DNA of 64,000 nucleotides, taken from contig CDROCS010001209.1 in NCBI GenBank assembly GCA_977020255.1, positions 124,001 through 188,000 on the forward strand, read 5' to 3'. The first letter of the stretch is position 1. Each line of letters opens with the position of its first letter. This DNA is from Obrimoposthia wandeli (taxonomy: Eukaryota). The notes below the pieces were generated by a model. The model did not search any database. It worked only from the letters and a program-made list of their open reading frames with translations, and was not told where the DNA came from. Position numbers and translations under genes: made by a program. Shown here piece after piece: positions 24,941 through 58,553 of this stretch.

Positions 24941-25025
24941 TGGTGCGGAAGGAGAGACTTGAACTCTCACACCTTGCGGCGCCAGAACCTAAATCTGGTG
25001 CGTCTACCAATTCCGCCACTTCCGC
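24941..25025 (-). tRNA. tRNA-Leu(TAG), type A
   Basis: GCGGAAG..CCAGA-TTTAGGT-TCTGG..CTTCCGC-ACCA, 85 nt. Confidence 0.97.
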
Positions 25026-25108
25026 ATATCTAATTTGCTCTTAACGAGCTTACATCGCTTAACTATAAGTCTTCTTGGTAAGAAGTAATCAAGCCACATA
25101 ATTAAATG

Positions 25109-25183
25109 TGGCAGGGCTACCTGGATTCGAACCAGGGGATGGCGGCATCAAAAGCCGCTGCCTTACCGCTTGGCGATAGCCCT
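25109..25183 (-). tRNA. tRNA-Gln(TTG)
   Basis: AGGGCTA..GCGGC-TTTTGAT-GCCGC..TAGCCCT-GCCA, 75 nt. Confidence 0.97.
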
Positions 25184-25241
25184 ACAGTTGTTCACTTAAG
25201 AACAGTTCTCTATTTAAAGAGAATAATAAGTCTTTAGAGAA

Positions 25242-25326
25242 TGGTGCGGAAAGAGAGACTTGAACTCTCACACCTTGCGGCGCCAGAACCTAAATCTGGT
25301 GCGTCTACCAATTCCGCCATTCCCGC
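25242..25326 (-). tRNA. tRNA-Leu(TAG), type B acceptor stem
   Basis: Acceptor GCGGGAA/TTTCCGC; otherwise as type A. Confidence 0.95.
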
Positions 25327-25442
25327 ATATATCTCATTCGAATAAATCCGATTGAGTGTTCTCTAGAGCTTATTGTACAGATTGAAGAACTGGTAAAGCT
25401 CAATCTGTATTACTGTGATAAATCACAGTCACAAAGTATAAA

Positions 25443-25527
25443 TGGTGCGGAAGGAGAGACTTGAACTCTCACACCTTGCGGCGCCAGAACCTAAATCTGG
25501 TGCGTCTACCAATTCCGCCACTTCCGC
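25443..25527 (-). tRNA. tRNA-Leu(TAG), type A
   Basis: Same sequence as 24941-25025. Confidence 0.97.
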
Positions 25528-25572
25528 GTATTTATACTTTTACCATAAATCGACTCAAAAAGAGAAGAAAAA

Positions 25573-25649
25573 TGGTGGCTACGACGGGATTCGAACCTGT
25601 GACCCCATCATTATGAGTGATGTGCTCTAACCAACTGAGCTACGTAGCC
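25573..25649 (-). tRNA. Elongator tRNA-Met(CAT)
   Basis: GGCTACG..CATCA-CTCATAA-TGATG..CGTAGCC-ACCA, 77 nt. Confidence 0.97.
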
Positions 25650-25715
25650 ATTTATTTATGCCGCTTAACTGTTTAGCTTCTTAAAAAGAAGTTAATCAAG
25701 CCACATAATTAAATG

Positions 25716-25790
25716 TGGCAGGGCTACCTGGATTCGAACCAGGGGATGGCGGCATCAAAAGCCGCTGCCTTACCGCTTGGCGATAGCCCT
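25716..25790 (-). tRNA. tRNA-Gln(TTG)
   Basis: Same sequence as 25109-25183. Confidence 0.97.
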
Positions 25791-25875
25791 ACAATGTTTC
25801 ATCAAAAATCGTTTGTTCAAATGCCATGTTTATTTAAAACAATCGACTTAAGAACAATTCTCTTCGCAAAGAGAA

Positions 25876-25960
25876 TGGTGCGGAAGGAGAGACTTGAACT
25901 CTCACACCTTGCGGCGCCAGAACCTAAATCTGGTGCGTCTACCAATTCCGCCACTTCCGC
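25876..25960 (-). tRNA. tRNA-Leu(TAG), type A
   Basis: Repeat copy. Confidence 0.97.
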
Positions 25961-26043
25961 ATATCTAATTTGCTCTTAACGAGCTTACATCGCTTAACTA
26001 TAAGTCTTCTTGGTAAGAAGTAATCAAGCCACATAATTAAATG

Positions 26044-26118
26044 TGGCAGGGCTACCTGGATTCGAACCAGGGGATGGCGGCATCAAAAGCCGCTGCCTTA
26101 CCGCTTGGCGATAGCCCT
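26044..26118 (-). tRNA. tRNA-Gln(TTG)
   Basis: Repeat copy. Confidence 0.97.
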
Positions 26119-26150
26119 ACAGGTGTATCTTTTAATAAGTCTTTAGAGAA

Positions 26151-26235
26151 TGGTGCGGAAAGAGAGACTTGAACTCTCACACCTTGCGGCGCCAGAACCT
26201 AAATCTGGTGCGTCTACCAATTCCGCCATTCCCGC
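26151..26235 (-). tRNA. tRNA-Leu(TAG), type B
   Basis: GCGGGAA/TTTCCGC acceptor. Confidence 0.95.
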
Positions 26236-26368
26236 ATATTGTCTCATTCGAATAAATCCGATTGAGTATATCTCTAAAGCTTATTGTACAGATCTAAGAA
26301 TTGGTAAAAACTCGAACTGTACATGTGTTAATCACCGAATGATTAACGATTCTTTATTCAAAGAATAA

Positions 26369-26453
26369 TGGTGCGGAAGGAGAGACTTGAACTCTCACAC
26401 CTTGCGGCGCCAGAACCTAAATCTGGTGCGTCTACCAATTCCGCCACTTCCGC
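26369..26453 (-). tRNA. tRNA-Leu(TAG), type A
   Basis: Repeat copy. Confidence 0.97.
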
Positions 26454-26536
26454 ATATCTAATTTGCTCTTAACGAGCTTACATCGCTTAACTATAAGTCT
26501 TCTTGGTAAGAAGTAATCAAGCCACATAATTAAATG

Positions 26537-26611
26537 TGGCAGGGCTACCTGGATTCGAACCAGGGGATGGCGGCATCAAAAGCCGCTGCCTTACCGCTTG
26601 GCGATAGCCCT
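26537..26611 (-). tRNA. tRNA-Gln(TTG)
   Basis: Repeat copy. Confidence 0.97.
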
Positions 26612-26670
26612 ACAGTTGTTCACTTAAGAACAGTTCTCTCGTGAAAGAGAATAATAAGTCTTTAGAGAAA

Positions 26671-26755
26671 TGGTGCGGAAAGAGAGACTTGAACTCTCAC
26701 ACCTTGCGGCGCCAGAACCTAAATCTGGTGCGTCTACCAATTCCGCCATTCCCGC
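26671..26755 (-). tRNA. tRNA-Leu(TAG), type B
   Basis: GCGGGAA/TTTCCGC acceptor. Confidence 0.95.
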
Positions 26756-26871
26756 ATATATCTCATTCGAATAAATCCGATTGAGTGTTCTCTAGAGCTT
26801 ATTGTACAGATTGAAGAACTGGTAAAGCTCAATCTGTATTACTGTGATAAATCACAGTCACAAAGTATAAA

Positions 26872-26956
26872 TGGTGCGGAAGGAGAGACTTGAACTCTCA
26901 CACCTTGCGGCGCCAGAACCTAAATCTGGTGCGTCTACCAATTCCGCCACTTCCGC
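26872..26956 (-). tRNA. tRNA-Leu(TAG), type A
   Basis: Repeat copy. Confidence 0.97.
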
Positions 26957-27001
26957 GTATTTATACTTTTACCATAAATCGACTCAAAAAGAGAAGAGAA
27001 A

Positions 27002-27078
27002 TGGTGGCTACGACGGGATTCGAACCTGTGACCCCATCATTATGAGTGATGTGCTCTAACCAACTGAGCTACGTAGCC
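27002..27078 (-). tRNA. Elongator tRNA-Met(CAT)
   Basis: Repeat copy. Confidence 0.97.
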
Positions 27079-27144
27079 ATTTATTTATGCCGCTTAACTG
27101 TTTAGCTTCTTAAAAAGAAGTTAATCAAGCCACATACTTAAATG

Positions 27145-27219
27145 TGGCAGGGCTACCTGGATTCGAACCAGGGGATGGCGGCATCAAAAGCCGCTGCCTT
27201 ACCGCTTGGCGATAGCCCT
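27145..27219 (-). tRNA. tRNA-Gln(TTG)
   Basis: Repeat copy. Confidence 0.97.
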
Positions 27220-27304
27220 ACAATGTTTCATCAAAAATCGTTTGTTCAAATGCCATGTTTATTTAAAACAATCGACTTAAGAACAGTTCTCTTCGCAAAG
27301 AGAA

Positions 27305-27389
27305 TGGTGCGGAAGGAGAGACTTGAACTCTCACACCTTGCGGCGCCAGAACCTAAATCTGGTGCGTCTACCAATTCCGCCACTTCCGC
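27305..27389 (-). tRNA. tRNA-Leu(TAG), type A
   Basis: Repeat copy. Confidence 0.97.
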
Positions 27390-27437
27390 ATCTGGTAATT
27401 TTACATCTTGCGATGCTTCATCTCAAAAGAGTGAAGA

Positions 27438-27514
27438 TGGTGGCTACGACGGGATTCGAACCTGTGACCCCATCATTATGAGTGATGTGCTCTAACCAAC
27501 TGAGCTACGTAGCC
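27438..27514 (-). tRNA. Elongator tRNA-Met(CAT)
   Basis: Repeat copy. Confidence 0.97.
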
Positions 27515-27581
27515 ATTTTATTTATGCCGCTTAACTATTTGCTACTTAAAAAAGAAAGCAATTAAGCCACATAATTAAATG

Positions 27582-27656
27582 TGGCAGAGCTACCTGGATT
27601 CGAACCAGGGGATGGCGGCATCAAAAGCCGCTGCCTTACCGCTTGGCGATAGCCCT
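27582..27656 (-). tRNA. tRNA-Gln(TTG) variant with C70U (G3:U70 pair)
   Basis: Plus strand reads tggcagAgcta instead of tggcagGgcta at 27588; the spurious ORF translation changes from MWQG to MWQS accordingly. Confidence 0.9.
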
Positions 27657-27741
27657 ACAATGTTTCATCAAAAATCGTTTGTTCAAATGCCATGTTTATT
27701 TAAAACAATCGACTTAAGAACAGTTCTCTTCGCAAAGAGAA

Positions 27742-27826
27742 TGGTGCGGAAGGAGAGACTTGAACTCTCACACCTTGCGGCGCCAGAACCTAAATCTGGT
27801 GCGTCTACCAATTCCGCCACTTCCGC
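27742..27826 (-). tRNA. tRNA-Leu(TAG), type A
   Basis: Repeat copy. Confidence 0.97.
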
Positions 27827-27873
27827 ATCTGGTAATTTTACATCTTGCGATGCTTCATCTCAAAGAGTGAAGA

Positions 27874-27950
27874 TGGTGGCTACGACGGGATTCGAACCTG
27901 TGACCCCATCATTATGAGTGATGTGCTCTAACCAACTGAGCTACGTAGCC
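27874..27950 (-). tRNA. Elongator tRNA-Met(CAT)
   Basis: Repeat copy. Confidence 0.97.
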
Positions 27951-28017
27951 ATTTTATTTATGTCGCTTAACTATTTGCTACTTAAAAAAGAAAGCAATTA
28001 AGCCACATAATTAAATG

Positions 28018-28092
28018 TGGCAGGGCTACCTGGATTCGAACCAGGGGATGGCGGCATCAAAAGCCGCTGCCTTACCGCTTGGCGATAGCCCT
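28018..28092 (-). tRNA. tRNA-Gln(TTG)
   Basis: Repeat copy. Confidence 0.97.
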
Positions 28093-28176
28093 ACAGTGTT
28101 TCATCAAAAACCGTTTGTTCAAAGCCCTGTTTATTTAAAACAAGTCATTTAAGAACAGTTCTCTTCGCAAAGAGAA

Positions 28177-28261
28177 TGGTGCGGAAGGAGAGACTTGAAC
28201 TCTCACACCTTGCGGCGCCAGAACCTAAATCTGGTGCGTCTACCAATTCCGCCACTTCCGC
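28177..28261 (-). tRNA. tRNA-Leu(TAG), type A
   Basis: Repeat copy. Confidence 0.97.
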
Positions 28262-28309
28262 ATCTGGTAATTTTACATCTTGCGATGCTTCATCTCAAAA
28301 GAGTGAAGA

Positions 28310-28386
28310 TGGTGGCTACGACGGGATTCGAACCTGTGACCCCATCATTATGAGTGATGTGCTCTAACCAACTGAGCTACGTAGCC
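28310..28386 (-). tRNA. Elongator tRNA-Met(CAT), first gene of the operon
   Basis: Repeat copy; directly downstream of the promoter. Confidence 0.97.
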
Positions 28387-53017: not shown

Positions 53018-53053
53018 TTGCTTAATATTCAGTGCTGAGTATTATAGGCGACC
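53018..53053 (+). promoter_or_regulatory. Probable sigma70 promoter of the tRNA-Pro array
   Basis: TTGCTT (53018-53023), 16-bp spacer, TATTAT (53040-53045), then aggcgacc; AT-rich upstream. Confidence 0.6.
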
Positions 53054-53078: not shown

Positions 53079-53177
53079 CGGTGAATAGTAGAGCTTGGTA
53101 GCGCATCCTGATTTTAGGTATAGCGGACCAGAGGGACGGGGGTAAACCTTTACCTTGTTTAGCCTCTTCACTGATAA
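53079..53177 (+). ncRNA. tRNA-Pro-derived 99-nt element (type B), ends ATAA instead of ACCA
   Basis: Pro acceptor and D-loop sequence retained; anticodon region cctgattttaggtatagcgg; T loop aaacctttaccttgtttag. Confidence 0.75.
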
Positions 53178-53241
53178 CTATTATTTCTATTGGATGTAAG
53201 TCGGATAGAATCAATCTGGTAAGATTTAAAATATACAATGT

Positions 53242-53258
53242 CGGTGAATAGCGCAGCT

Positions 53259-53291
<33 letters not shown>

Positions 53292-53318
53292 GGGGTTCGA
53301 ATCCCTCTTCACCGACCA
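53242..53318 (+). tRNA. tRNA-Pro(TGG), canonical
   Basis: CGGTGAA..TCTGG-TTTGGGA-CCAGA..GGGGG-TTCGAAT-CCCTC-TTCACCG-ACCA, 77 nt. Confidence 0.97.
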
Positions 53319-53382
53319 CTATTATTTCTATTGGATGTAAGTCGAATAGAATCAATCTGGTAAGATTTAAAATATACAATGT

Positions 53383-53481
53383 CGGTGAATAGTAGAGCTT
53401 GGTAGCGCATCCTGACTTTAGGTATAGCGGACCAGAGGGTCGGGGGTAAACCTTTACCTTGTTTAGCCTCTTCACTGATAA
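53383..53481 (+). ncRNA. tRNA-Pro-derived 99-nt element (type B)
   Basis: As 53079-53177 but with cctgactttagg. Confidence 0.75.
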
Positions 53482-53545
53482 TTATTATTTCTATTGGATG
53501 TAAGTCGAATAGAATCAATCTGGTAAGATTTAAAATATACGATGT

Positions 53546-53644
53546 CGGTGAATAGTAGAGCTTGGTAGCGCATCCTGACTTTAGGTATAGCGGACCAGAG
53601 GGTCGGGGGTAAACCTTTACCTTGTTTAGCCTCTTCACTGATAA
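53546..53644 (+). ncRNA. tRNA-Pro-derived 99-nt element (type B)
   Basis: Same body as 53383-53481. Confidence 0.75.
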
Positions 53645-53708
53645 TTATTATTTCTATTGGATGTAAGTCGGATAGAATCAATCTGGTAAGATTTAAAATA
53701 TACAATGT

Positions 53709-53725
53709 CGGTGAATAGCGCAGCT

Positions 53726-53758
<33 letters not shown>

Positions 53759-53785
53759 GGGGTTCGAATCCCTCTTCACCGACCA
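53709..53785 (+). tRNA. tRNA-Pro(TGG), canonical
   Basis: Same sequence as 53242-53318. Confidence 0.97.
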
Positions 53786-53849
53786 CTATTATTTCTATTG
53801 GACGCAAGTTGGATAGAATGAATCTGGTAAGATTTAAAATATACAATGT

Positions 53850-53866
53850 CGGTGAATAGCGCAGCT

Positions 53867-53899
<33 letters not shown>

Positions 53900-53926
53900 G
53901 GGGTTCGAATCCCTCTTCACCGACCA
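53850..53926 (+). tRNA. tRNA-Pro(TGG), canonical
   Basis: Same sequence as 53242-53318. Confidence 0.97.
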
Positions 53927-53990
53927 CTATTATTTCTATTAGATGTAAGTCGAATAGAATCAATCTGGTAAGATTCAAAATATACAATAT

Positions 53991-54089
53991 TGGTGAATAG
54001 TAGAGCTTGGTAGCGCATCCTGATTTTAGGTATAGCGGACCAGAGGGTCGGGGGTAAACCTTTACCTTATTTAGCCTCTTCACCGACCA
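53991..54089 (+). ncRNA. tRNA-Pro-derived 99-nt element (type B body) with intact CACCG-ACCA 3' end
   Basis: Type B inserts, U1 instead of C1, canonical 3' acceptor strand and CCA. Confidence 0.75.
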
Positions 54090-54153
54090 CTATTATTTTT
54101 ATTGGACGCAAGTCGAATAGAATCAATCTGGTAAGATTCAAAATATACAATGT

Positions 54154-54232
54154 CGGTGAATAGCGCAGCTTGGTAGCGTTATCTTGCTAAAATCAGAGAG
54201 GGTCGGGGGTTCGAATCCCTCTTCACCGACCA
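54154..54232 (+). ncRNA. tRNA-Pro-derived 79-nt element (type C) with replaced anticodon arm
   Basis: Near-canonical D arm, canonical T arm, acceptor and CCA; anticodon region ttatcttgctaaaatcagaga. Confidence 0.75.
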
Positions 54233-54238
54233 CTTTCG

Positions 54239-54267
54239 AAAGCCTCGTCTTAGGACGAGGCTTTTTT
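54239..54267 (+). terminator. Intrinsic terminator of the tRNA-Pro array
   Basis: aaagcctcgtc-ttag-gacgaggctttttt. Confidence 0.9.
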
Positions 54268-54329
54268 CGTTTCTAGCATATATTTTTATTTATGCTTAAG
54301 CGCTTCTGTTGTTCTTCATGCTTTTAAAA

Positions 54330-55190
54330 TTAGCACTTAACCTTTTTGCTTTTTGTCAGTTGAGTAACCGTGAACCCATTCTGCTTTAACAAATTAGGTA
54401 ATCCTTTATCACCAAATAAATGGAATGCGCCTACTACAATCATAAATTTACCTTGTTGGTAAGGTGAGCCATTGGTTAATTGGTTAGCCCAGTCTTCATT
54501 ACGATCAAAAATAAGTACATTATCGATAGCTTCACTGTGTTGGCTTTCTTCAAATAGCGTGGTTAATTTTTGGCTGTCGCCTGATTTCCAAGCATTAATC
54601 AGACATGTGAATTCGCTACTCATTTTCTCCCAGTCATCAATCGATGTTGTGAGCATTTCTTTACCGTGATCGGGCATACTTTTGAGCATTGATAGTTGTT
54701 GTTCAACGCTTTCTAATTCGAGAATAGGTAGATCTTCACTCATTGCCCTTCTTAGTAAAATAGTGTCAATACCTTGCTCTGCACTCAAGCCCAATTGGGT
54801 GGCAAGTGACATTTGAATACTGATCACAGTTAACCAAGGTGGGTTTTTACTGAGGGGGGAATAAGGCAGTTTTAAGTCATTGGCAATTGAGGCGAGTTTT
54901 TCAAGCTGCTGATGATTCAGCATTGATGATGTAGTTGGCCCAGATATATCTAAAGTCGCTTGAGAGGGGCGTAGAATATTGGCTTCAACAACAAGGCTGT
55001 CAGCCGTTTTCCAATGCTCTAGAAAGGCACTGGGTAAAGGATACATATCACGAGTGCCTGCATGTACAGAGCCTAAAATAATAAATTCGCGGTTAGCGTC
55101 TTTTACTTGCCAAACAATAGGCTCGGCAAAAACGGATGTTGTGATAAATGGCAGTACCATAAGTGCTTTTGAAAACAAATTTTTGAACAT
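54330..55190 (-). CDS. ybaP: TraB/GumN family protein (YbaP-like)
   Basis: Signal peptide; GSVHAG, ELESVEQQL, RNEDW, VVGAFHL; neighbourhood as in E. coli ybaK-ybaP-copA. Confidence 0.8.
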   Translation of the reverse strand: MFKNLFSKALMVLPFITTSVFAEPIVWQVKDANREFIILGSVHAGTRDMYPLPSAFLEHWKTADSLVVEANILRPSQATLDISGPTTSSMLNHQQLEKLASIANDLKLPYSPLSKNPPWLTVISIQMSLATQLGLSAEQGIDTILLRRAMSEDLPILELESVEQQLSMLKSMPDHGKEMLTTSIDDWEKMSSEFTCLINAWKSGDSQKLTTLFEESQHSEAIDNVLIFDRNEDWANQLTNGSPYQQGKFMIVVGAFHLFGDKGLPNLLKQNGFTVTQLTKSKKVKC

Positions 55191-55428: not shown

Positions 55429-58326
55429 TTATTTCTCCTGCTGATTAGGTTTGAATAAACGCAAGCGGTTTGCATTACTTACCACAGTGATAGACGATAG
55501 AGCCATGGCAGCCCCTGCAATAACAGGGCTTAACAAGGTACCCGTTAATGGAAATAAAACGCCTGCTGCAATGGGAATTCCTAGTGAGTTATATATGAAG
55601 GCACCAAATAAATTTTGCTTCATATTTTCCAATGTTGCTTTTGAGAGTTGAATCGCATCAATAACACCGTGTAAAGAATGACGCATTAACGCAAATTGGG
55701 CACTTTCTATTGCAATATCACTACCGCTTCCCATTGCGATGCCTACCTCAGCCAGTGCGAGCGCTGGGGCATCGTTAATACCATCACCAACCATCGCGAC
55801 TTTGTGTCCTTGTTGTTGAAGCTCTGCTATTTTCGCTGCTTTACCATCAGGTAATACCCCTGCAATGACGGTATCAATACCAGCTTCATGGGCGATGGCA
55901 TTGGCTGTAACCAGCGTGTCACCTGTTAGCATCACCACATTAAGGTTCATTGCTTTCATACGTTTTACTGCTGAAATAGAATCTTGACGTAAGGGATCAC
56001 TCACCCCAAAAACACCAGCTAATTGGTTATCAATCGCCATATAGATAGGGGTTGCACCTTTACTGGCAATATTATGAACATCTTCTTCTGCCGCATGAAT
56101 GTCGATCTGATGTTGTTGAAGCAAACGTGCATTGCCTAATAGAAGTTGGTGTTCACTTACTTTACCGATAACACCAAAGCCAGGTTTGGCTTCGAATGAT
56201 TGCTGTTTAAGTAGTACAAGTGCTTCGGTATTGGCTGCTGCAATAATTGCACGCGCCAGAGGGTGCTCTGAACCTTGTTCAAGGCAGGCTGCTAAATTAA
56301 GTAAGTGGTCACTTTGGATATTATTGTAGGTATGAATATTAACGACTTGAGGTTTGCCTTCTGTTAGCGTTCCCGTTTTATCAAGTACAACGGTGTCGAT
56401 ATCAGCGGCAAGCTGCATCGCTTCTGCATCTCGAATTAAGATACCATATTCTGCTGCCCGCCCCACGCCGACAGTAACCGACATCGGGGTTGCTAAGCCA
56501 AGTGCACAAGGGCAAGCGATGATTAATATTGTCGTTGCTGTGATCAGCATGTAGATCGACGAGGGTTCAGGGCCAAAGTAGTACCATACCATCGCAGTTA
56601 GAATGGCAATAATCATAACGCTGGGTACGAAAATCGCTGAAATAGTATCCGCTAACCGTGCCAGTGCGGGCTTGCTGCTTTGGGCTTGGCGAACGAGTTG
56701 GATAATACGCGCCAACATGGTATTGCTACCAATCTGTTCTGCTTTAAAAATTAAGCTGCCATTTTGGTTCATTGTGCCAGCATGCAGTTTATCACCGACT
56801 TGTTTGTTGGCTGGAATGGGTTCACCGGTCAACATTGATTCATCAATATAGCTTTGGCCTTCTTCAACAACACCATCAACCGGAATTTTTGACCCTGGGT
56901 GAAGGCGTATCAGCATGCCTGCTTGTACGTCGGCGAGTGGTACTTCTTGCTCGTTTCCATTAATAATAACAATGGCTGTTTGAGGTTGTAGATCGATTAA
57001 ACGCTCTAACGCTTTTGATGTACGGCTACGGGCTTTCGCTTCAAGTGCATGCCCCACGGTAATTAGGCCTAAAATCATTGCACTTGCTTCAAAGTACACA
57101 TGACGAGCGGGCTCTGGGAAAATATCGGGTGCAATAACCACTAACATGGAAAATAGCCAAGCGGATCCTGTACCAAGGGCAACTAAGGTGTCCATGGTTG
57201 CACGGTGGTGCATGAATGCTTTCCAAGCATTAATATAGAAATGACGGCCTGCGGTGATTAATAAAATAAAGGTGATAATGCCTATTAGCCCCCAAGCCAT
57301 TTGACTGCTAGGGGAATTAATCATCATATTCCCGCCAAATAATCCCCAAGCCATCATCGGAATACCGAGACCGAGAGAAATAGAGGCATTTCGCATATGA
57401 AGGCGATATGTTGTGTCATTTTGTTTTTGTTGGCGTGCGCGGCGTGTTTGCTCATCGGCACTTAATTCAGCCCCGTAACCCGCATTGATGATGGCAGTAA
57501 TAATCTCTTGTTCAGAGGCTGTACCGGTAACTAAGGCTGTACGTTCTGCTAAATTAATATTGGCTTGCTTCACGCCTGGCACAGTTAAGATTGCTTTTTC
57601 AACGGAGGATACGCAACTTGCACAGGTCATCCCAGAAAGTAGAAATTGCAAGGTACTCGAAGAGGCATCTTCTTGTATTGGAGTGATGATCGGTGTGTCT
57701 GGTGTCTGGCTGACTTCTGTATCGTCTTGATTGACTACAGCTCCTGTGTCATCAACTCTTTTCGCCATAAATCCGAGTGATTCAATCAAAGAAATAAGCG
57801 TATCGGCTTCGGCTTGAGCCGTGATATCAGCGTGCGTTTTACTGATAGTAAAAGCACTGATAGTAGATTGTTCTGTGAGTTCATTTTCGATTTTTTTGAC
57901 GCATTTACCGCAATTTAGCCCCGATAAAGCAAAATGGAAAGTGTGTTCAGTCGGCACGGAGTAACCTAACGTTTCAATCAAGGTGATTAAGTTGGTCTCT
58001 GTGATGGCCCCTGTTACTGACACTTCCGTTTTGGTAACTGAAAAATCAGTGATTTGGTCATTATCAGCCAACGCTGCTTCTACTTTTGCGACACATTTAC
58101 CACATGATAAACCCTGAAGTGGCAATACATGCTGATAGCCTGCCTCGTAACCTAATGCTGTAATGGTTGATATGATAAGTGCGAGCTCGACGTTTCCTTT
58201 TATGATAGCGCGCTGAGTATCTACCTCAACATGCTCTATACCTAGTAAAGACGTTAAAGCAGTGTGGATTTTGTTCGCACAATTCATACAACGAACTTTT
58301 CCGAGTGGAAGGATAAATTCGGCCAT
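55429..58326 (-). CDS. copA: Cu(I)-translocating P1B-type ATPase with four N-terminal metal-binding domains
   Basis: CMNC, CGKC, CGKC, CASC; TGEP, CPC, DKTGT, HP, GDGINDAP, YN and MALSS. Confidence 0.97.
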   Translation of the reverse strand: MAEFILPLGKVRCMNCANKIHTALTSLLGIEHVEVDTQRAIIKGNVELALIISTITALGYEAGYQHVLPLQGLSCGKCVAKVEAALADNDQITDFSVTKTEVSVTGAITETNLITLIETLGYSVPTEHTFHFALSGLNCGKCVKKIENELTEQSTISAFTISKTHADITAQAEADTLISLIESLGFMAKRVDDTGAVVNQDDTEVSQTPDTPIITPIQEDASSSTLQFLLSGMTCASCVSSVEKAILTVPGVKQANINLAERTALVTGTASEQEIITAIINAGYGAELSADEQTRRARQQKQNDTTYRLHMRNASISLGLGIPMMAWGLFGGNMMINSPSSQMAWGLIGIITFILLITAGRHFYINAWKAFMHHRATMDTLVALGTGSAWLFSMLVVIAPDIFPEPARHVYFEASAMILGLITVGHALEAKARSRTSKALERLIDLQPQTAIVIINGNEQEVPLADVQAGMLIRLHPGSKIPVDGVVEEGQSYIDESMLTGEPIPANKQVGDKLHAGTMNQNGSLIFKAEQIGSNTMLARIIQLVRQAQSSKPALARLADTISAIFVPSVMIIAILTAMVWYYFGPEPSSIYMLITATTILIIACPCALGLATPMSVTVGVGRAAEYGILIRDAEAMQLAADIDTVVLDKTGTLTEGKPQVVNIHTYNNIQSDHLLNLAACLEQGSEHPLARAIIAAANTEALVLLKQQSFEAKPGFGVIGKVSEHQLLLGNARLLQQHQIDIHAAEEDVHNIASKGATPIYMAIDNQLAGVFGVSDPLRQDSISAVKRMKAMNLNVVMLTGDTLVTANAIAHEAGIDTVIAGVLPDGKAAKIAELQQQGHKVAMVGDGINDAPALALAEVGIAMGSGSDIAIESAQFALMRHSLHGVIDAIQLSKATLENMKQNLFGAFIYNSLGIPIAAGVLFPLTGTLLSPVIAGAAMALSSITVVSNANRLRLFKPNQQEK

Positions 58327-58389
58327 GTTTGTCACCTTAGCTACGAGAAGCGATAAGTGGAATTATAAAAATACCTTAATTTGATAGTA

Positions 58390-58420
58390 ACAATAAACCT
58401 TCTAGCCAGTGGAAGGTCAA
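58390..58420 (-). promoter_or_regulatory. CueR-type copA promoter with dyad operator
   Basis: Minus strand TTGACC-TTCCACTGGCTAGAAGGTT (19 bp)-TATTGT; dyad ACCTTC..GAAGGT as in MerR-family CueR promoters. Confidence 0.9.
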
Positions 58421-58553
58421 GCGCGTTATATCAAATAATTTGATGGGCGGTTTAGATGGAGGATAGTATAAGAAAAAACTTGTCAAAAAGGGGATCTTCG
58501 CGGAATAATAGCATTCCCAACCTTCCATAAGCTGTAATGTTTAAGAGGCCGAT

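What the first reader, a model, noticed from the sequence alone, without database searches (positions are those of the whole stretch)
54020..54232. Terminal type C unit carries the reverse complement of the type B anticodon cassette
Seen: C keeps Pro-like D arm, T arm, acceptor and CCA, but its anticodon region contains CTAAAATCAG (54187-54196). This is the exact reverse complement of CTGATTTTAG in unit 1 (53108-53117) and unit 7 (54020-54029), with one mismatch to units 3 and 4. Inference: either a micro-inversion links B and C historically, or C and B are sense/antisense partners that can pair within the same precursor. C might also fold a weak arm with loop CU-AAA-AU on a Pro acceptor, which would be a candidate Phe-to-Pro misreader, but that stem is poor.
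Basis: partly seen in the sequence, partly recalled or inferred. Interest (0 to 1): 0.7.

Follow-up and report, generated by a model that had tools for sequence, protein, structure and literature searches.

The report
Recently broken last tRNA-Pro copy
The last unit of a Photobacterium tRNA-Pro gene array is an ordinary tRNA-Pro gene whose anticodon arm was overwritten by a 21-base patch seen in this genome alone. So it is most likely a fresh pseudogene, not a conserved partner of the older "type B" units or a new decoding tRNA.

Summary
CTAAAATCAG (54187-54196) is the exact reverse complement of CTGATTTTAG in B units 1 and 7, with one mismatch to units 3 and 4.

The window is a Photobacterium contig (profundum/frigidiphilum/indicum clade) inside a 1.35 Gb eukaryote assembly. 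A conspecific metagenome contig is identical to the window across the whole terminal unit, terminator and downstream DNA. The one exception is a 21-nt patch (54179-54199) that replaces the normal 19-nt anticodon arm of tRNA-Pro(UGG).

Every other orthologous array I could read ends in an intact tRNA-Pro(UGG). The patch was not found in 401 Vibrionaceae genomes or in JGI metagenome contigs, and no donor sequence turned up.

The B cassette is old.

The ARAGORN "tRNA-Phe(AAA)" anticodon stem is energetically unfavourable. The 10-mer is unlikely to be pure chance (P about 4e-4 within B cassettes, about 1e-2 anywhere in the array), so a short templated copy from a B unit is plausible but unproven. 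Folding of the unprocessed precursor does predict B7-C pairing.

Verdict: a strain-specific disabled tRNA copy, of low interest. The scan has not reported this on other DNA.

The parts
53018..53045 (+). Inferred operon promoter: TTGCTT, 16-nt spacer, TATTAT, followed by a GC-rich discriminator
   Evidence: Read from the sequence. The same arrangement sits upstream of the arrays of other Photobacterium species. The consensus scan did not flag it, so it is inferred.
53079..53177 (+). Unit 1, type B tRNA-Pro-like unit. Its D stem is broken, it has 10 extra nt in the anticodon region and 12 extra in the T region, and it has no CCA. It carries CTGATTTTAG at 53108-53117.
   Evidence: Neither ARAGORN nor Rfam calls it a tRNA.
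53242..53318 (+). Unit 2, intact tRNA-Pro(UGG), type A
   Evidence: 66.9 bits
53383..53481 (+). Unit 3, type B (cassette variant CTGACTTTAG)
53546..53644 (+). Unit 4, type B (cassette variant CTGACTTTAG)
53709..53785 (+). Unit 5, intact tRNA-Pro(UGG)
53850..53926 (+). Unit 6, intact tRNA-Pro(UGG)
53991..54089 (+). Unit 7, type B with an A-type 3' acceptor strand and CCA. It carries CTGATTTTAG at 54020-54029, at the apex of the predicted B hairpin.
   Evidence: The same unit, also starting TGGTGAATAG, precedes the terminal unit in the conspecific contig L075.
54154..54232 (+). Unit 8, type C: a tRNA-Pro(UGG) body whose anticodon arm has been replaced. It is 79 nt and ends in CCA.
54179..54199 (+). 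The lesion: the 21-nt patch TTATCTTGCTAAAATCAGAGA in place of the ancestral 19-nt CATCTGGTTTGGGACCAGA. It is the only difference from the conspecific contig between 54151 and 54339.
   Evidence: alignment A2. Not found elsewhere.
54187..54196 (+). The 10-mer CTAAAATCAG, reverse complement of the B cassette apex
54238..54271 (+). Intrinsic terminator of the operon: 12-bp stem, 4-nt loop, T run
   Evidence: Conserved in all orthologous arrays.

Best explanation
Unit C is the promoter-distal tRNA-Pro(UGG) gene of a tandem tRNA-Pro operon in a Photobacterium of the profundum/frigidiphilum/indicum clade. In this lineage alone, one recent complex mutation overwrote its 19-nt anticodon arm with an unrelated 21-nt patch.

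The result is a tRNA-like pseudogene. Acceptor stem, D arm, T arm and CCA are intact, so it is probably still transcribed and end-processed (inferred). The anticodon arm is now an essentially unpaired stretch that lacks the G35/G36 proline anticodon. It should therefore neither decode nor be charged efficiently (inferred).

Losing this copy is tolerable, because at least five identical intact tRNA-Pro(UGG) genes remain.

The 10 nt that mirror the B-unit hairpin apex are most simply a footprint of short templated synthesis during that mutation: a strand switch or snap-back onto the opposite strand of a neighbouring B unit. I put this at roughly 0.6 within this explanation, with coincidence as the alternative. 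They are not a conserved pairing site.

A side effect predicted only in silico is that the unprocessed B7-C precursor prefers a long-range B7-C helix over the two tRNA-like folds.
For: Shown:
- The conspecific JGI contig L075 encodes a flanking TraB/GumN protein 99% identical to the window's. It is base-for-base identical to the window at 54151-54178 and 54200-54339, and differs only in the patch. This points to a single event, not gradual decay.
- The terminal unit is intact A-type in every other orthologous array read: P. frigidiphilum, P. profundum SS9 and 3TCK, P. indicum, and further NCBI and JGI contigs. The same holds in more distant Photobacterium species.
- The patch is absent from 401 Vibrionaceae species genomes at up to 3 mismatches and from JGI metagenome contigs. 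No donor was found in the own assembly or in the genus.
- The ARAGORN anticodon stem (U-G, C.A, U-G, U-A, G-C) costs energy. The cloverleaf scores -15.2 kcal/mol with it, -18.9 without it and -27.3 for unit A, and its pair probabilities are 0.07 or less. Rfam aligns C only by skipping the arm.
- Three intact copies lie in the array, and two more exact copies lie on contig C2834 of the same assembly.
- The 10-mer is improbable by chance at that location.
- The window differs from conspecific contigs by scattered SNPs, with only 2 gaps in 4291 nt, so the assembly looks clean.
Against: - No read-level confirmation of the patch. Only Logan contigs could be laid, and none of those listed covers 54179-54196. 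In run X1 the depth arithmetic shows no coverage there, although its downstream flank is identical. Contigs of that kind drop low-coverage alternative paths, so this neither supports nor refutes the patch.
- A clean template-switch model fails. Only 10 of the 21 patch bases are explained, and neither junction shows the expected continuity with the reverse complement of B.
- Transcription, processing and non-charging of C are inferred, not measured.
- The B cassette is conserved enough to be functional, so an effect of C on B RNA cannot be excluded.
Confidence: 0.7

Rival explanations
1. Assembly or consensus artefact. The true terminal unit is A-type, and the 21-nt patch was created while assembling or polishing a low-coverage bacterial contig through a tandem repeat inside a eukaryote assembly.
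For: In run X1 the downstream flank is identical (54205-54700, 0 differences), yet no laid contig covers 54179-54194. All X1 contigs also read T at 54139, where the window has C. No public run held more than 0.67 of the sampled words. The patch occurs in no other data set.
Against: Logan contigs remove low-coverage parallel paths, which predicts exactly these two holes. Consensus errors are usually indels or single bases, not a coherent 21-nt replacement flanked by perfect sequence. The contig otherwise differs from conspecific contigs only by scattered SNPs.
Confidence: 0.12
2. C is a functional antisense partner, a built-in sponge or clamp for the conserved B hairpin loop. It pairs with B RNA in the same precursor and alters processing or B activity.
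For: There are 10 nt of perfect complementarity to the apical loop and flanking pairs of the B hairpin. The isolated duplex is -9.7 kcal/mol. The helix is in the minimum-energy structure of the precursor and of the whole operon transcript, with pair probabilities of about 0.77, and it gains 8.8 kcal/mol over the tRNA-like folds. The B cassette is conserved across Vibrionaceae, so it may have a function to modulate.
Against: C occurs in one genome only. B occurs without C in 13 of 67 Photobacterium and 23 of 401 Vibrionaceae species genomes, and in a conspecific contig. The B loop varies (GATCTT, GTTTTT, GAGTTT) without any partner. The nested fold requires both acceptor stems to be sacrificed and ignores co-transcriptional folding and fast RNase P/E processing.
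Confidence: 0.04
3. C is a working tRNA with anticodon AAA, charged with Phe or mischarged with Pro, that reads UUU or UUC.
For: ARAGORN calls it tRNA-Phe(AAA). In its register the 7-nt loop CUAAAAU has U33 and A37. Acceptor stem, D arm, T arm, A73 and CCA are intact. The Rfam score of 39.5 bits is above the gathering score of 29.
Against: The anticodon stem is unstable. The cloverleaf needs two non-standard extra nucleotides. A35/A36 replace G35/G36, which from my own knowledge of E. coli ProRS (not tested here) are major proline identity elements. Bacteria do not normally use unmodified A34 outside tRNA-Arg(ACG). The unit is not conserved in any relative.
Confidence: 0.02
4. The 10-mer match is pure coincidence. 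The patch arose by an untemplated or otherwise unrelated complex mutation.
For: Five other 10-nt matches to the patch exist elsewhere in the 64-kb window by chance. The patch flanks do not continue the match. A reader scanning a whole window has many chances to see such a match.
Against: P = 3.7e-4 for a match inside the homologous B cassette, and 1.4e-2 for either orientation anywhere in the array.
Confidence: 0.3

Closest known systems
tRNA pseudogenes and degenerate tRNA-like units in tandem bacterial tRNA arrays. Photobacterium and Vibrio tRNA operons are known for heavy tandem amplification. I recall the tRNA-Pro/tRNA-His cluster of P. phosphoreum described by Giroux and Cedergren in the late 1980s. 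I confirmed only a citation to their 1989 paper and could not read either paper.
   Same: A tandem array under one promoter and one terminator. Unit number and order differ between strains. Intact and non-tRNA units are interspersed, and some units are mosaics of the two types.
   Different: Here the disabling event can be dated as very recent and delimited to one 21-nt patch, by comparison with a conspecific contig.
Template-switch (quasi-palindrome, strand-switch) mutations, in which a cluster of changes is a reverse-complement copy of nearby sequence. This comes from my own knowledge of the literature, not checked here.
   Same: A cluster of changes confined to a hairpin-forming region. Ten consecutive bases are the reverse complement of a sequence 167 nt upstream, at the homologous position of the neighbouring repeat.
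   Different: The copy explains under half of the patch, and the junctions are not clean. The putative template lies in another repeat unit, not in the same hairpin.
Regulatory RNAs derived from tRNA precursors, such as the 3' external transcribed spacer of an E. coli tRNA operon that sponges small RNAs. From my own knowledge, not checked here.
   Same: It works through base pairing by a by-product of a tRNA operon transcript, which is what the B-C pairing idea proposes. The pairing is predicted in silico.
   Different: Those elements are conserved and experimentally supported. C is confined to one genome and has no expression data.
Canonical bacterial elongator tRNA (Rfam RF00005)
   Same: Acceptor stem, D arm, T arm, CCA, and a score above the gathering threshold.
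   Different: No stable anticodon arm, no sensible anticodon, and no conservation.

Membership tests
Functional elongator tRNA | Cloverleaf with a stable 5-bp anticodon stem and a 7-nt loop | tested here: not met
   The stem is U-G, C.A, U-G, U-A, G-C. Forming it costs +3.7 kcal/mol and its pair probabilities are 0.07 or less. Rfam skips the arm.
Functional elongator tRNA | Acceptor stem, D arm, T arm and 3' CCA, with a covariance-model score above the gathering threshold | tested here: met
   39.5 bits against a gathering score of 29; the A units score 66.9. See also the alignment.
Functional elongator tRNA | Conserved in related genomes | tested here: not met
   0 of 401 Vibrionaceae genomes. 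Every orthologous terminal unit read is A-type.
Functional elongator tRNA | Anticodon identity elements for its synthetase (G35/G36 for ProRS) | tested here: not met
   The sequence shows A35/A36 in ARAGORN's register. That these are identity elements is my own knowledge, not tested here.
Functional elongator tRNA | Aminoacylated and used in translation | not testable with these tools
   Needs tRNA-seq, acid-gel northern blots or proteomics.
tRNA pseudogene (disabled copy in a tandem array) | Derived from an intact tRNA gene by a disabling change | tested here: met
   The conspecific contig has an intact tRNA-Pro(UGG) in an otherwise identical context.
tRNA pseudogene (disabled copy in a tandem array) | Redundant intact copies remain | tested here: met
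   Three in the array plus two exact copies on contig C2834.
tRNA pseudogene (disabled copy in a tandem array) | No selective retention of the altered form | tested here: met
   The patch is unique to the window.
Conserved sense/antisense RNA pair | Extended complementarity between the two RNAs | tested here: met
   10 of 10 nt, -9.7 kcal/mol. The helix is in the minimum-energy structure of the precursor.
Conserved sense/antisense RNA pair | The partners co-occur and co-vary across genomes | tested here: not met
   B occurs without C in 13 of 67 and 23 of 401 genomes and in a conspecific contig. The B loop varies with no partner.
Conserved sense/antisense RNA pair | A duplex forms in vivo or in vitro | not testable with these tools
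   No raw RNA reads could be laid. One search used contigs only.
Template-switch mutation | The whole mutation cluster is explained by one reverse-complement copy of nearby sequence with clean junctions | tested here: inconclusive
   10 of 21 nt are explained. The global alignment of the patch to the reverse complement of the B cassette beats shuffles only modestly (P = 0.02), and the junctions mismatch. The location statistic favours a templated origin.

The most novel reading that the evidence does not exclude
The patch is not just damage. By carrying the exact complement of the apical loop of the conserved B hairpin, unit C acts as a built-in antisense clamp. It captures B RNA in the same precursor and changes how the last units of the operon are processed, or what the B element does. 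That would be a strain-level regulatory innovation, caught just after it arose by copying a neighbouring unit's opposite strand.
Probability: 0.04. Interest if true: 0.55.

Novelty: new member of a known kind. Interest (0 to 1): 0.2.

Why it matters
On its own it matters little: it is one more disabled copy in a highly redundant, fast-changing tRNA array. It has two modest uses.

1. It is a cleanly delimited natural example of a one-step multi-base replacement in a hairpin-forming gene inside a tandem repeat, with a possible templated footprint. That bears on how loop-cassette variants such as type B first arise.
2. It is a caution for annotation. tRNA finders report it as tRNA-Phe(AAA), an anticodon bacteria do not normally use, and it should not be counted as a decoding tRNA.

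The more interesting object is the partner, the type B cassette. It is conserved across Vibrionaceae and has no described family.

Tried and rejected
**Donor search for the patch.**
- The window at up to 3 mismatches gave only the patch itself.
- The own assembly at up to 2 mismatches gave only chance hits on eukaryotic host contigs. I looked at them once and did not pursue them.
- The genus gave 6 hits with 2 mismatches, about the number expected by chance. The three I fetched are not tRNA genes.
- The family search and the JGI metagenome contigs gave nothing.

**In-place inversion.** I compared the patch with the reverse complement of the A arm and of the B cassette. Both beat the direct alignments only weakly (P = 0.025 and 0.021), and neither explains the flanks.

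**Read support.** Only Logan contigs were available. No listed contig spans the patch, so the result is uninformative.

**Exact-protein look-ups.** The window's own flanking proteins gave nothing useful. Going through the 90% cluster of the TraB/GumN protein did work.

**Rfam.** No family other than tRNA fits B or C.

**Literature.** Full-text searches found nothing on these units. The 1989 Photobacterium tRNA operon paper is not held.

**Covariation in the short B form.** The sequences are too conserved to test the structure: 1 compensatory pair out of 22.

Full report
**What is at the site.** The window carries an eight-unit tandem array from 53079 to 54232. Upstream lies a conserved promoter-like element, which I infer at 53018-53045. 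A strong intrinsic terminator follows at 54238-54265.
- ARAGORN and Rfam recognise units 2, 5 and 6 as identical tRNA-Pro(UGG) genes, type A.
- Units 1, 3, 4 and 7 are 99-nt tRNA-Pro-like units, type B. They have a broken D stem, 10 extra bases in the anticodon region and 12 extra in the T region. No tRNA finder or Rfam family recognises them.
- Unit 8, type C, is the subject of this finding.
- The flanking genes are a SmrA endonuclease and a small DUF3149 protein upstream, and a TraB/GumN protein and the copper ATPase CopA downstream.

**Origin of the DNA.** The window lies on contig C1209 of a 1.35 Gb, 6912-contig assembly, so it is a bacterial contig inside a eukaryote assembly. A B-specific 23-mer hit only Photobacterium frigidiphilum among species-representative genomes. 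The flanks are 92-94% identical to that species. The flanking TraB/GumN protein is 93-96.5% identical to those of P. profundum, P. frigidiphilum and P. indicum, and 99% identical to one from metagenome and Logan contigs. The organism is therefore a member of that clade.

CTAAAATCAG at 54187-54196 is the exact reverse complement of CTGATTTTAG at 53108-53117 and 54020-54029 (3 matches against 0.21 expected). Units 3 and 4 differ at one base. Unit C keeps the acceptor stem, D arm, T arm, discriminator and CCA of type A.

**What C is.** The decisive comparison is with JGI metagenome contig L075, which carries the 99%-identical flanking gene. Aligned to window 53690-54340, it is identical from the 5' end of the terminal unit to 54178, and again from 54200 through the terminator and 70 nt beyond.
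- The only difference is that the window has the 21-nt patch TTATCTTGCTAAAATCAGAGA where L075 has CATCTGGTTTGGGACCAGA. That sequence is the last D-stem base, position 26 and the anticodon arm of tRNA-Pro(UGG).
- L075 also has the same unusual unit 7, which starts TGGTGAATAG, immediately upstream.
- About a dozen changes packed into 21 nt inside 190 nt of perfect identity cannot be gradual decay. They are one event.
- Every other orthologous array I could read ends in an intact A-type gene before the same terminator: P. frigidiphilum (two assemblies), P. profundum SS9 and 3TCK, further assemblies labelled P. profundum, P. indicum, and several metagenome contigs. More distant Photobacterium species do the same.
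- The patch is absent at up to 3 mismatches from 401 Vibrionaceae species genomes and from JGI metagenome contigs.

**Is C a tRNA?** ARAGORN's tRNA-Phe(AAA) call needs a U-G, C.A, U-G, U-A, G-C stem, two bases between the D and anticodon arms, and a 6-nt variable loop.
- That cloverleaf evaluates to -15.2 kcal/mol, against -18.9 with the arm left open and -27.3 for unit A. In the ensemble the stem pairs have probabilities of 0.07 or less.
- Rfam reaches 39.5 bits only by deleting the arm from the alignment.
- The proline anticodon bases G35 and G36 are gone. From my own knowledge, these are major ProRS identity elements.
- I conclude that C is a tRNA-like pseudogene. Because its ends and its D and T arms are intact, it is probably still transcribed and trimmed, but that is inference.
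- At least five identical intact tRNA-Pro(UGG) genes remain: three here and two on contig C2834.

**Is the 10-mer more than chance?** I tested 200,000 random or shuffled 21-nt patches.
- A reverse-complement match of 10 nt or more fell in the B cassettes with P = 3.7e-4, anywhere in the array with P = 6.7e-3, and in either orientation with P = 1.4e-2.
- Ten-base matches to the patch elsewhere in the 64-kb window are common: there are five, all unrelated. Only the location is remarkable.
- The match does not extend. The bases on both sides differ from the reverse complement of B. Global alignments of the patch to the reverse complement of the B cassette or of the A arm beat shuffles only modestly, at P about 0.02.
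- No donor for the whole patch was found.
- My reading is that a short stretch was probably copied from the opposite strand of a neighbouring B unit during a complex replication or repair event. That accounts for under half of the patch, and it cannot be proven from one sequence.

**The pairing hypothesis.**
- In every B fold the B 10-mer sits at the apex of a predicted local hairpin. The isolated 10-bp duplex is worth -9.7 kcal/mol.
- In a nested fold of the unprocessed B7-spacer-C-terminator RNA, and of the whole operon transcript, the B7-C helix is part of the minimum-energy structure, with pair probabilities of about 0.77.
- That structure is 8.8 kcal/mol better than the best one in which both units keep their own acceptor stems. 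The same comparison gives 1.5 kcal/mol for the ancestral sequence. The pairing is therefore thermodynamically credible.
- It is not a conserved system. The B cassette CATCCTGATTTTAGG(A/T)ATAGCGGACC occurs in 13 of 67 Photobacterium species genomes and in 23 of 401 Vibrionaceae genomes. Loop variants such as GGATCTT, GTTTTT and GAGTTT occur among them. None has a C-type complement, and the conspecific contig has B without C.

**Is the patch real?** I could lay only Logan contigs. In run X1 the downstream flank (54205-54700) is identical to the window. The depth in the bin covering the patch is exactly what the contigs ending at 54178 contribute, so no laid contig covers the patch. Position 54139 also reads T in all X1 contigs. 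Both are what bubble removal in such contigs would produce for a low-coverage path parallel to the abundant A-type path, so the result is uninformative. Against conspecific contigs the window shows scattered SNPs and only 2 gaps in 4291 nt, so the consensus looks sound. I give an artefact about 0.12.

**Context on type B.** B is old and conserved, yet it has no Rfam family.
- In many species it is a roughly 94-nt short form: the 5' half of tRNA-Pro, then the cassette, then two small hairpins, abutting the 5' end of a genuine tRNA-Pro.
- Its D stem is disrupted in every form. The disruption is on the 5' strand in the window's clade and on the 3' strand elsewhere.
- Arrays differ widely between strains in the number and order of A and B units. 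Some are all-A, and SS9 has A/B mosaic units. This indicates unequal crossing-over and gene conversion.
- Covariation could not test the structure, because the sequences are too similar.

**Verdict.** The functional interpretations are not supported by comparative data. A historical link between B and C through a short templated copy is plausible but unproven. The feature is a private, recently disabled tRNA-Pro copy, of low interest, though it is a neat example and a warning that automated "tRNA-Phe(AAA)" calls can be spurious. Three chance pattern hits lay on host (eukaryotic) contigs. I viewed them once for context and did not analyse them further.

Noticed in passing
window 53079-53177, 53383-53481, 53546-53644, 53991-54089; loci L059, L060, L062-L072: The type B anticodon cassette CATCCTGATTTTAGG(A/T)ATAGCGGACC is conserved in 13 of 67 Photobacterium and 23 of 401 Vibrionaceae species genomes, although the spacers around it diverge completely. 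Many species carry a roughly 94-nt short form that serves as the 5' leader of a genuine tRNA-Pro. The D stem is disrupted in every form. No Rfam family matches. This looks like an undescribed conserved element derived from tRNA-Pro.
   Followed up: partly
L049 (P. profundum SS9 chromosome 1, 14-unit array): Some units are mosaics: B-type D arm and cassette with an A-type T arm, or an A-type 5' half with a B-type T region. This shows recombination or gene conversion between A and B units.
   Followed up: partly
L077, L078, L088-L090 versus L079, L082, L075, window: Array composition differs sharply between close strains. 3TCK-type arrays are A-A-A(-A), L079 is A-B-A-B-A, the window is B-A-B-B-A-A-B-C, and SS9 has 14 units. 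B is often but not always the first unit after the promoter.
   Followed up: partly
L059 about 2150-2350, L060 about 1700-1900, L064 about 1690-1900, L066 about 1690-1900, L068 about 1470-1700: In several other Photobacterium species the terminal tRNA-Pro and terminator are followed by one or two degenerate duplicates. Each is a variant tRNA-like unit with different anticodon and T-loop cassettes, plus a terminator copy carrying an insertion.
   Followed up: no
run X5, loose end behind window 54178: Another Photobacterium population carries a further B-like cassette variant that starts CATCTCTGATGTTAGGAA after the D arm.
   Followed up: no
window 57300-57830 and 58363-58459 (copA): Relative to a conspecific Logan contig, the differences are strongly clustered in two tracts of copA while the rest is nearly identical. 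This looks like recombination tracts.
   Followed up: no
window 24941-28386, minus strand: A second large tandem array holds 23 tRNA genes (Leu-UAG, Gln-UUG, Met-CAU) with no gap large enough to hide a degenerate unit.
   Followed up: no
G000 contigs C253, C506, C5398, C2253: The assembly holds contigs of other bacteria whose tRNA-Pro genes are only 76-80% identical to the query, so there is more than one bacterial contaminant or symbiont.
   Followed up: no
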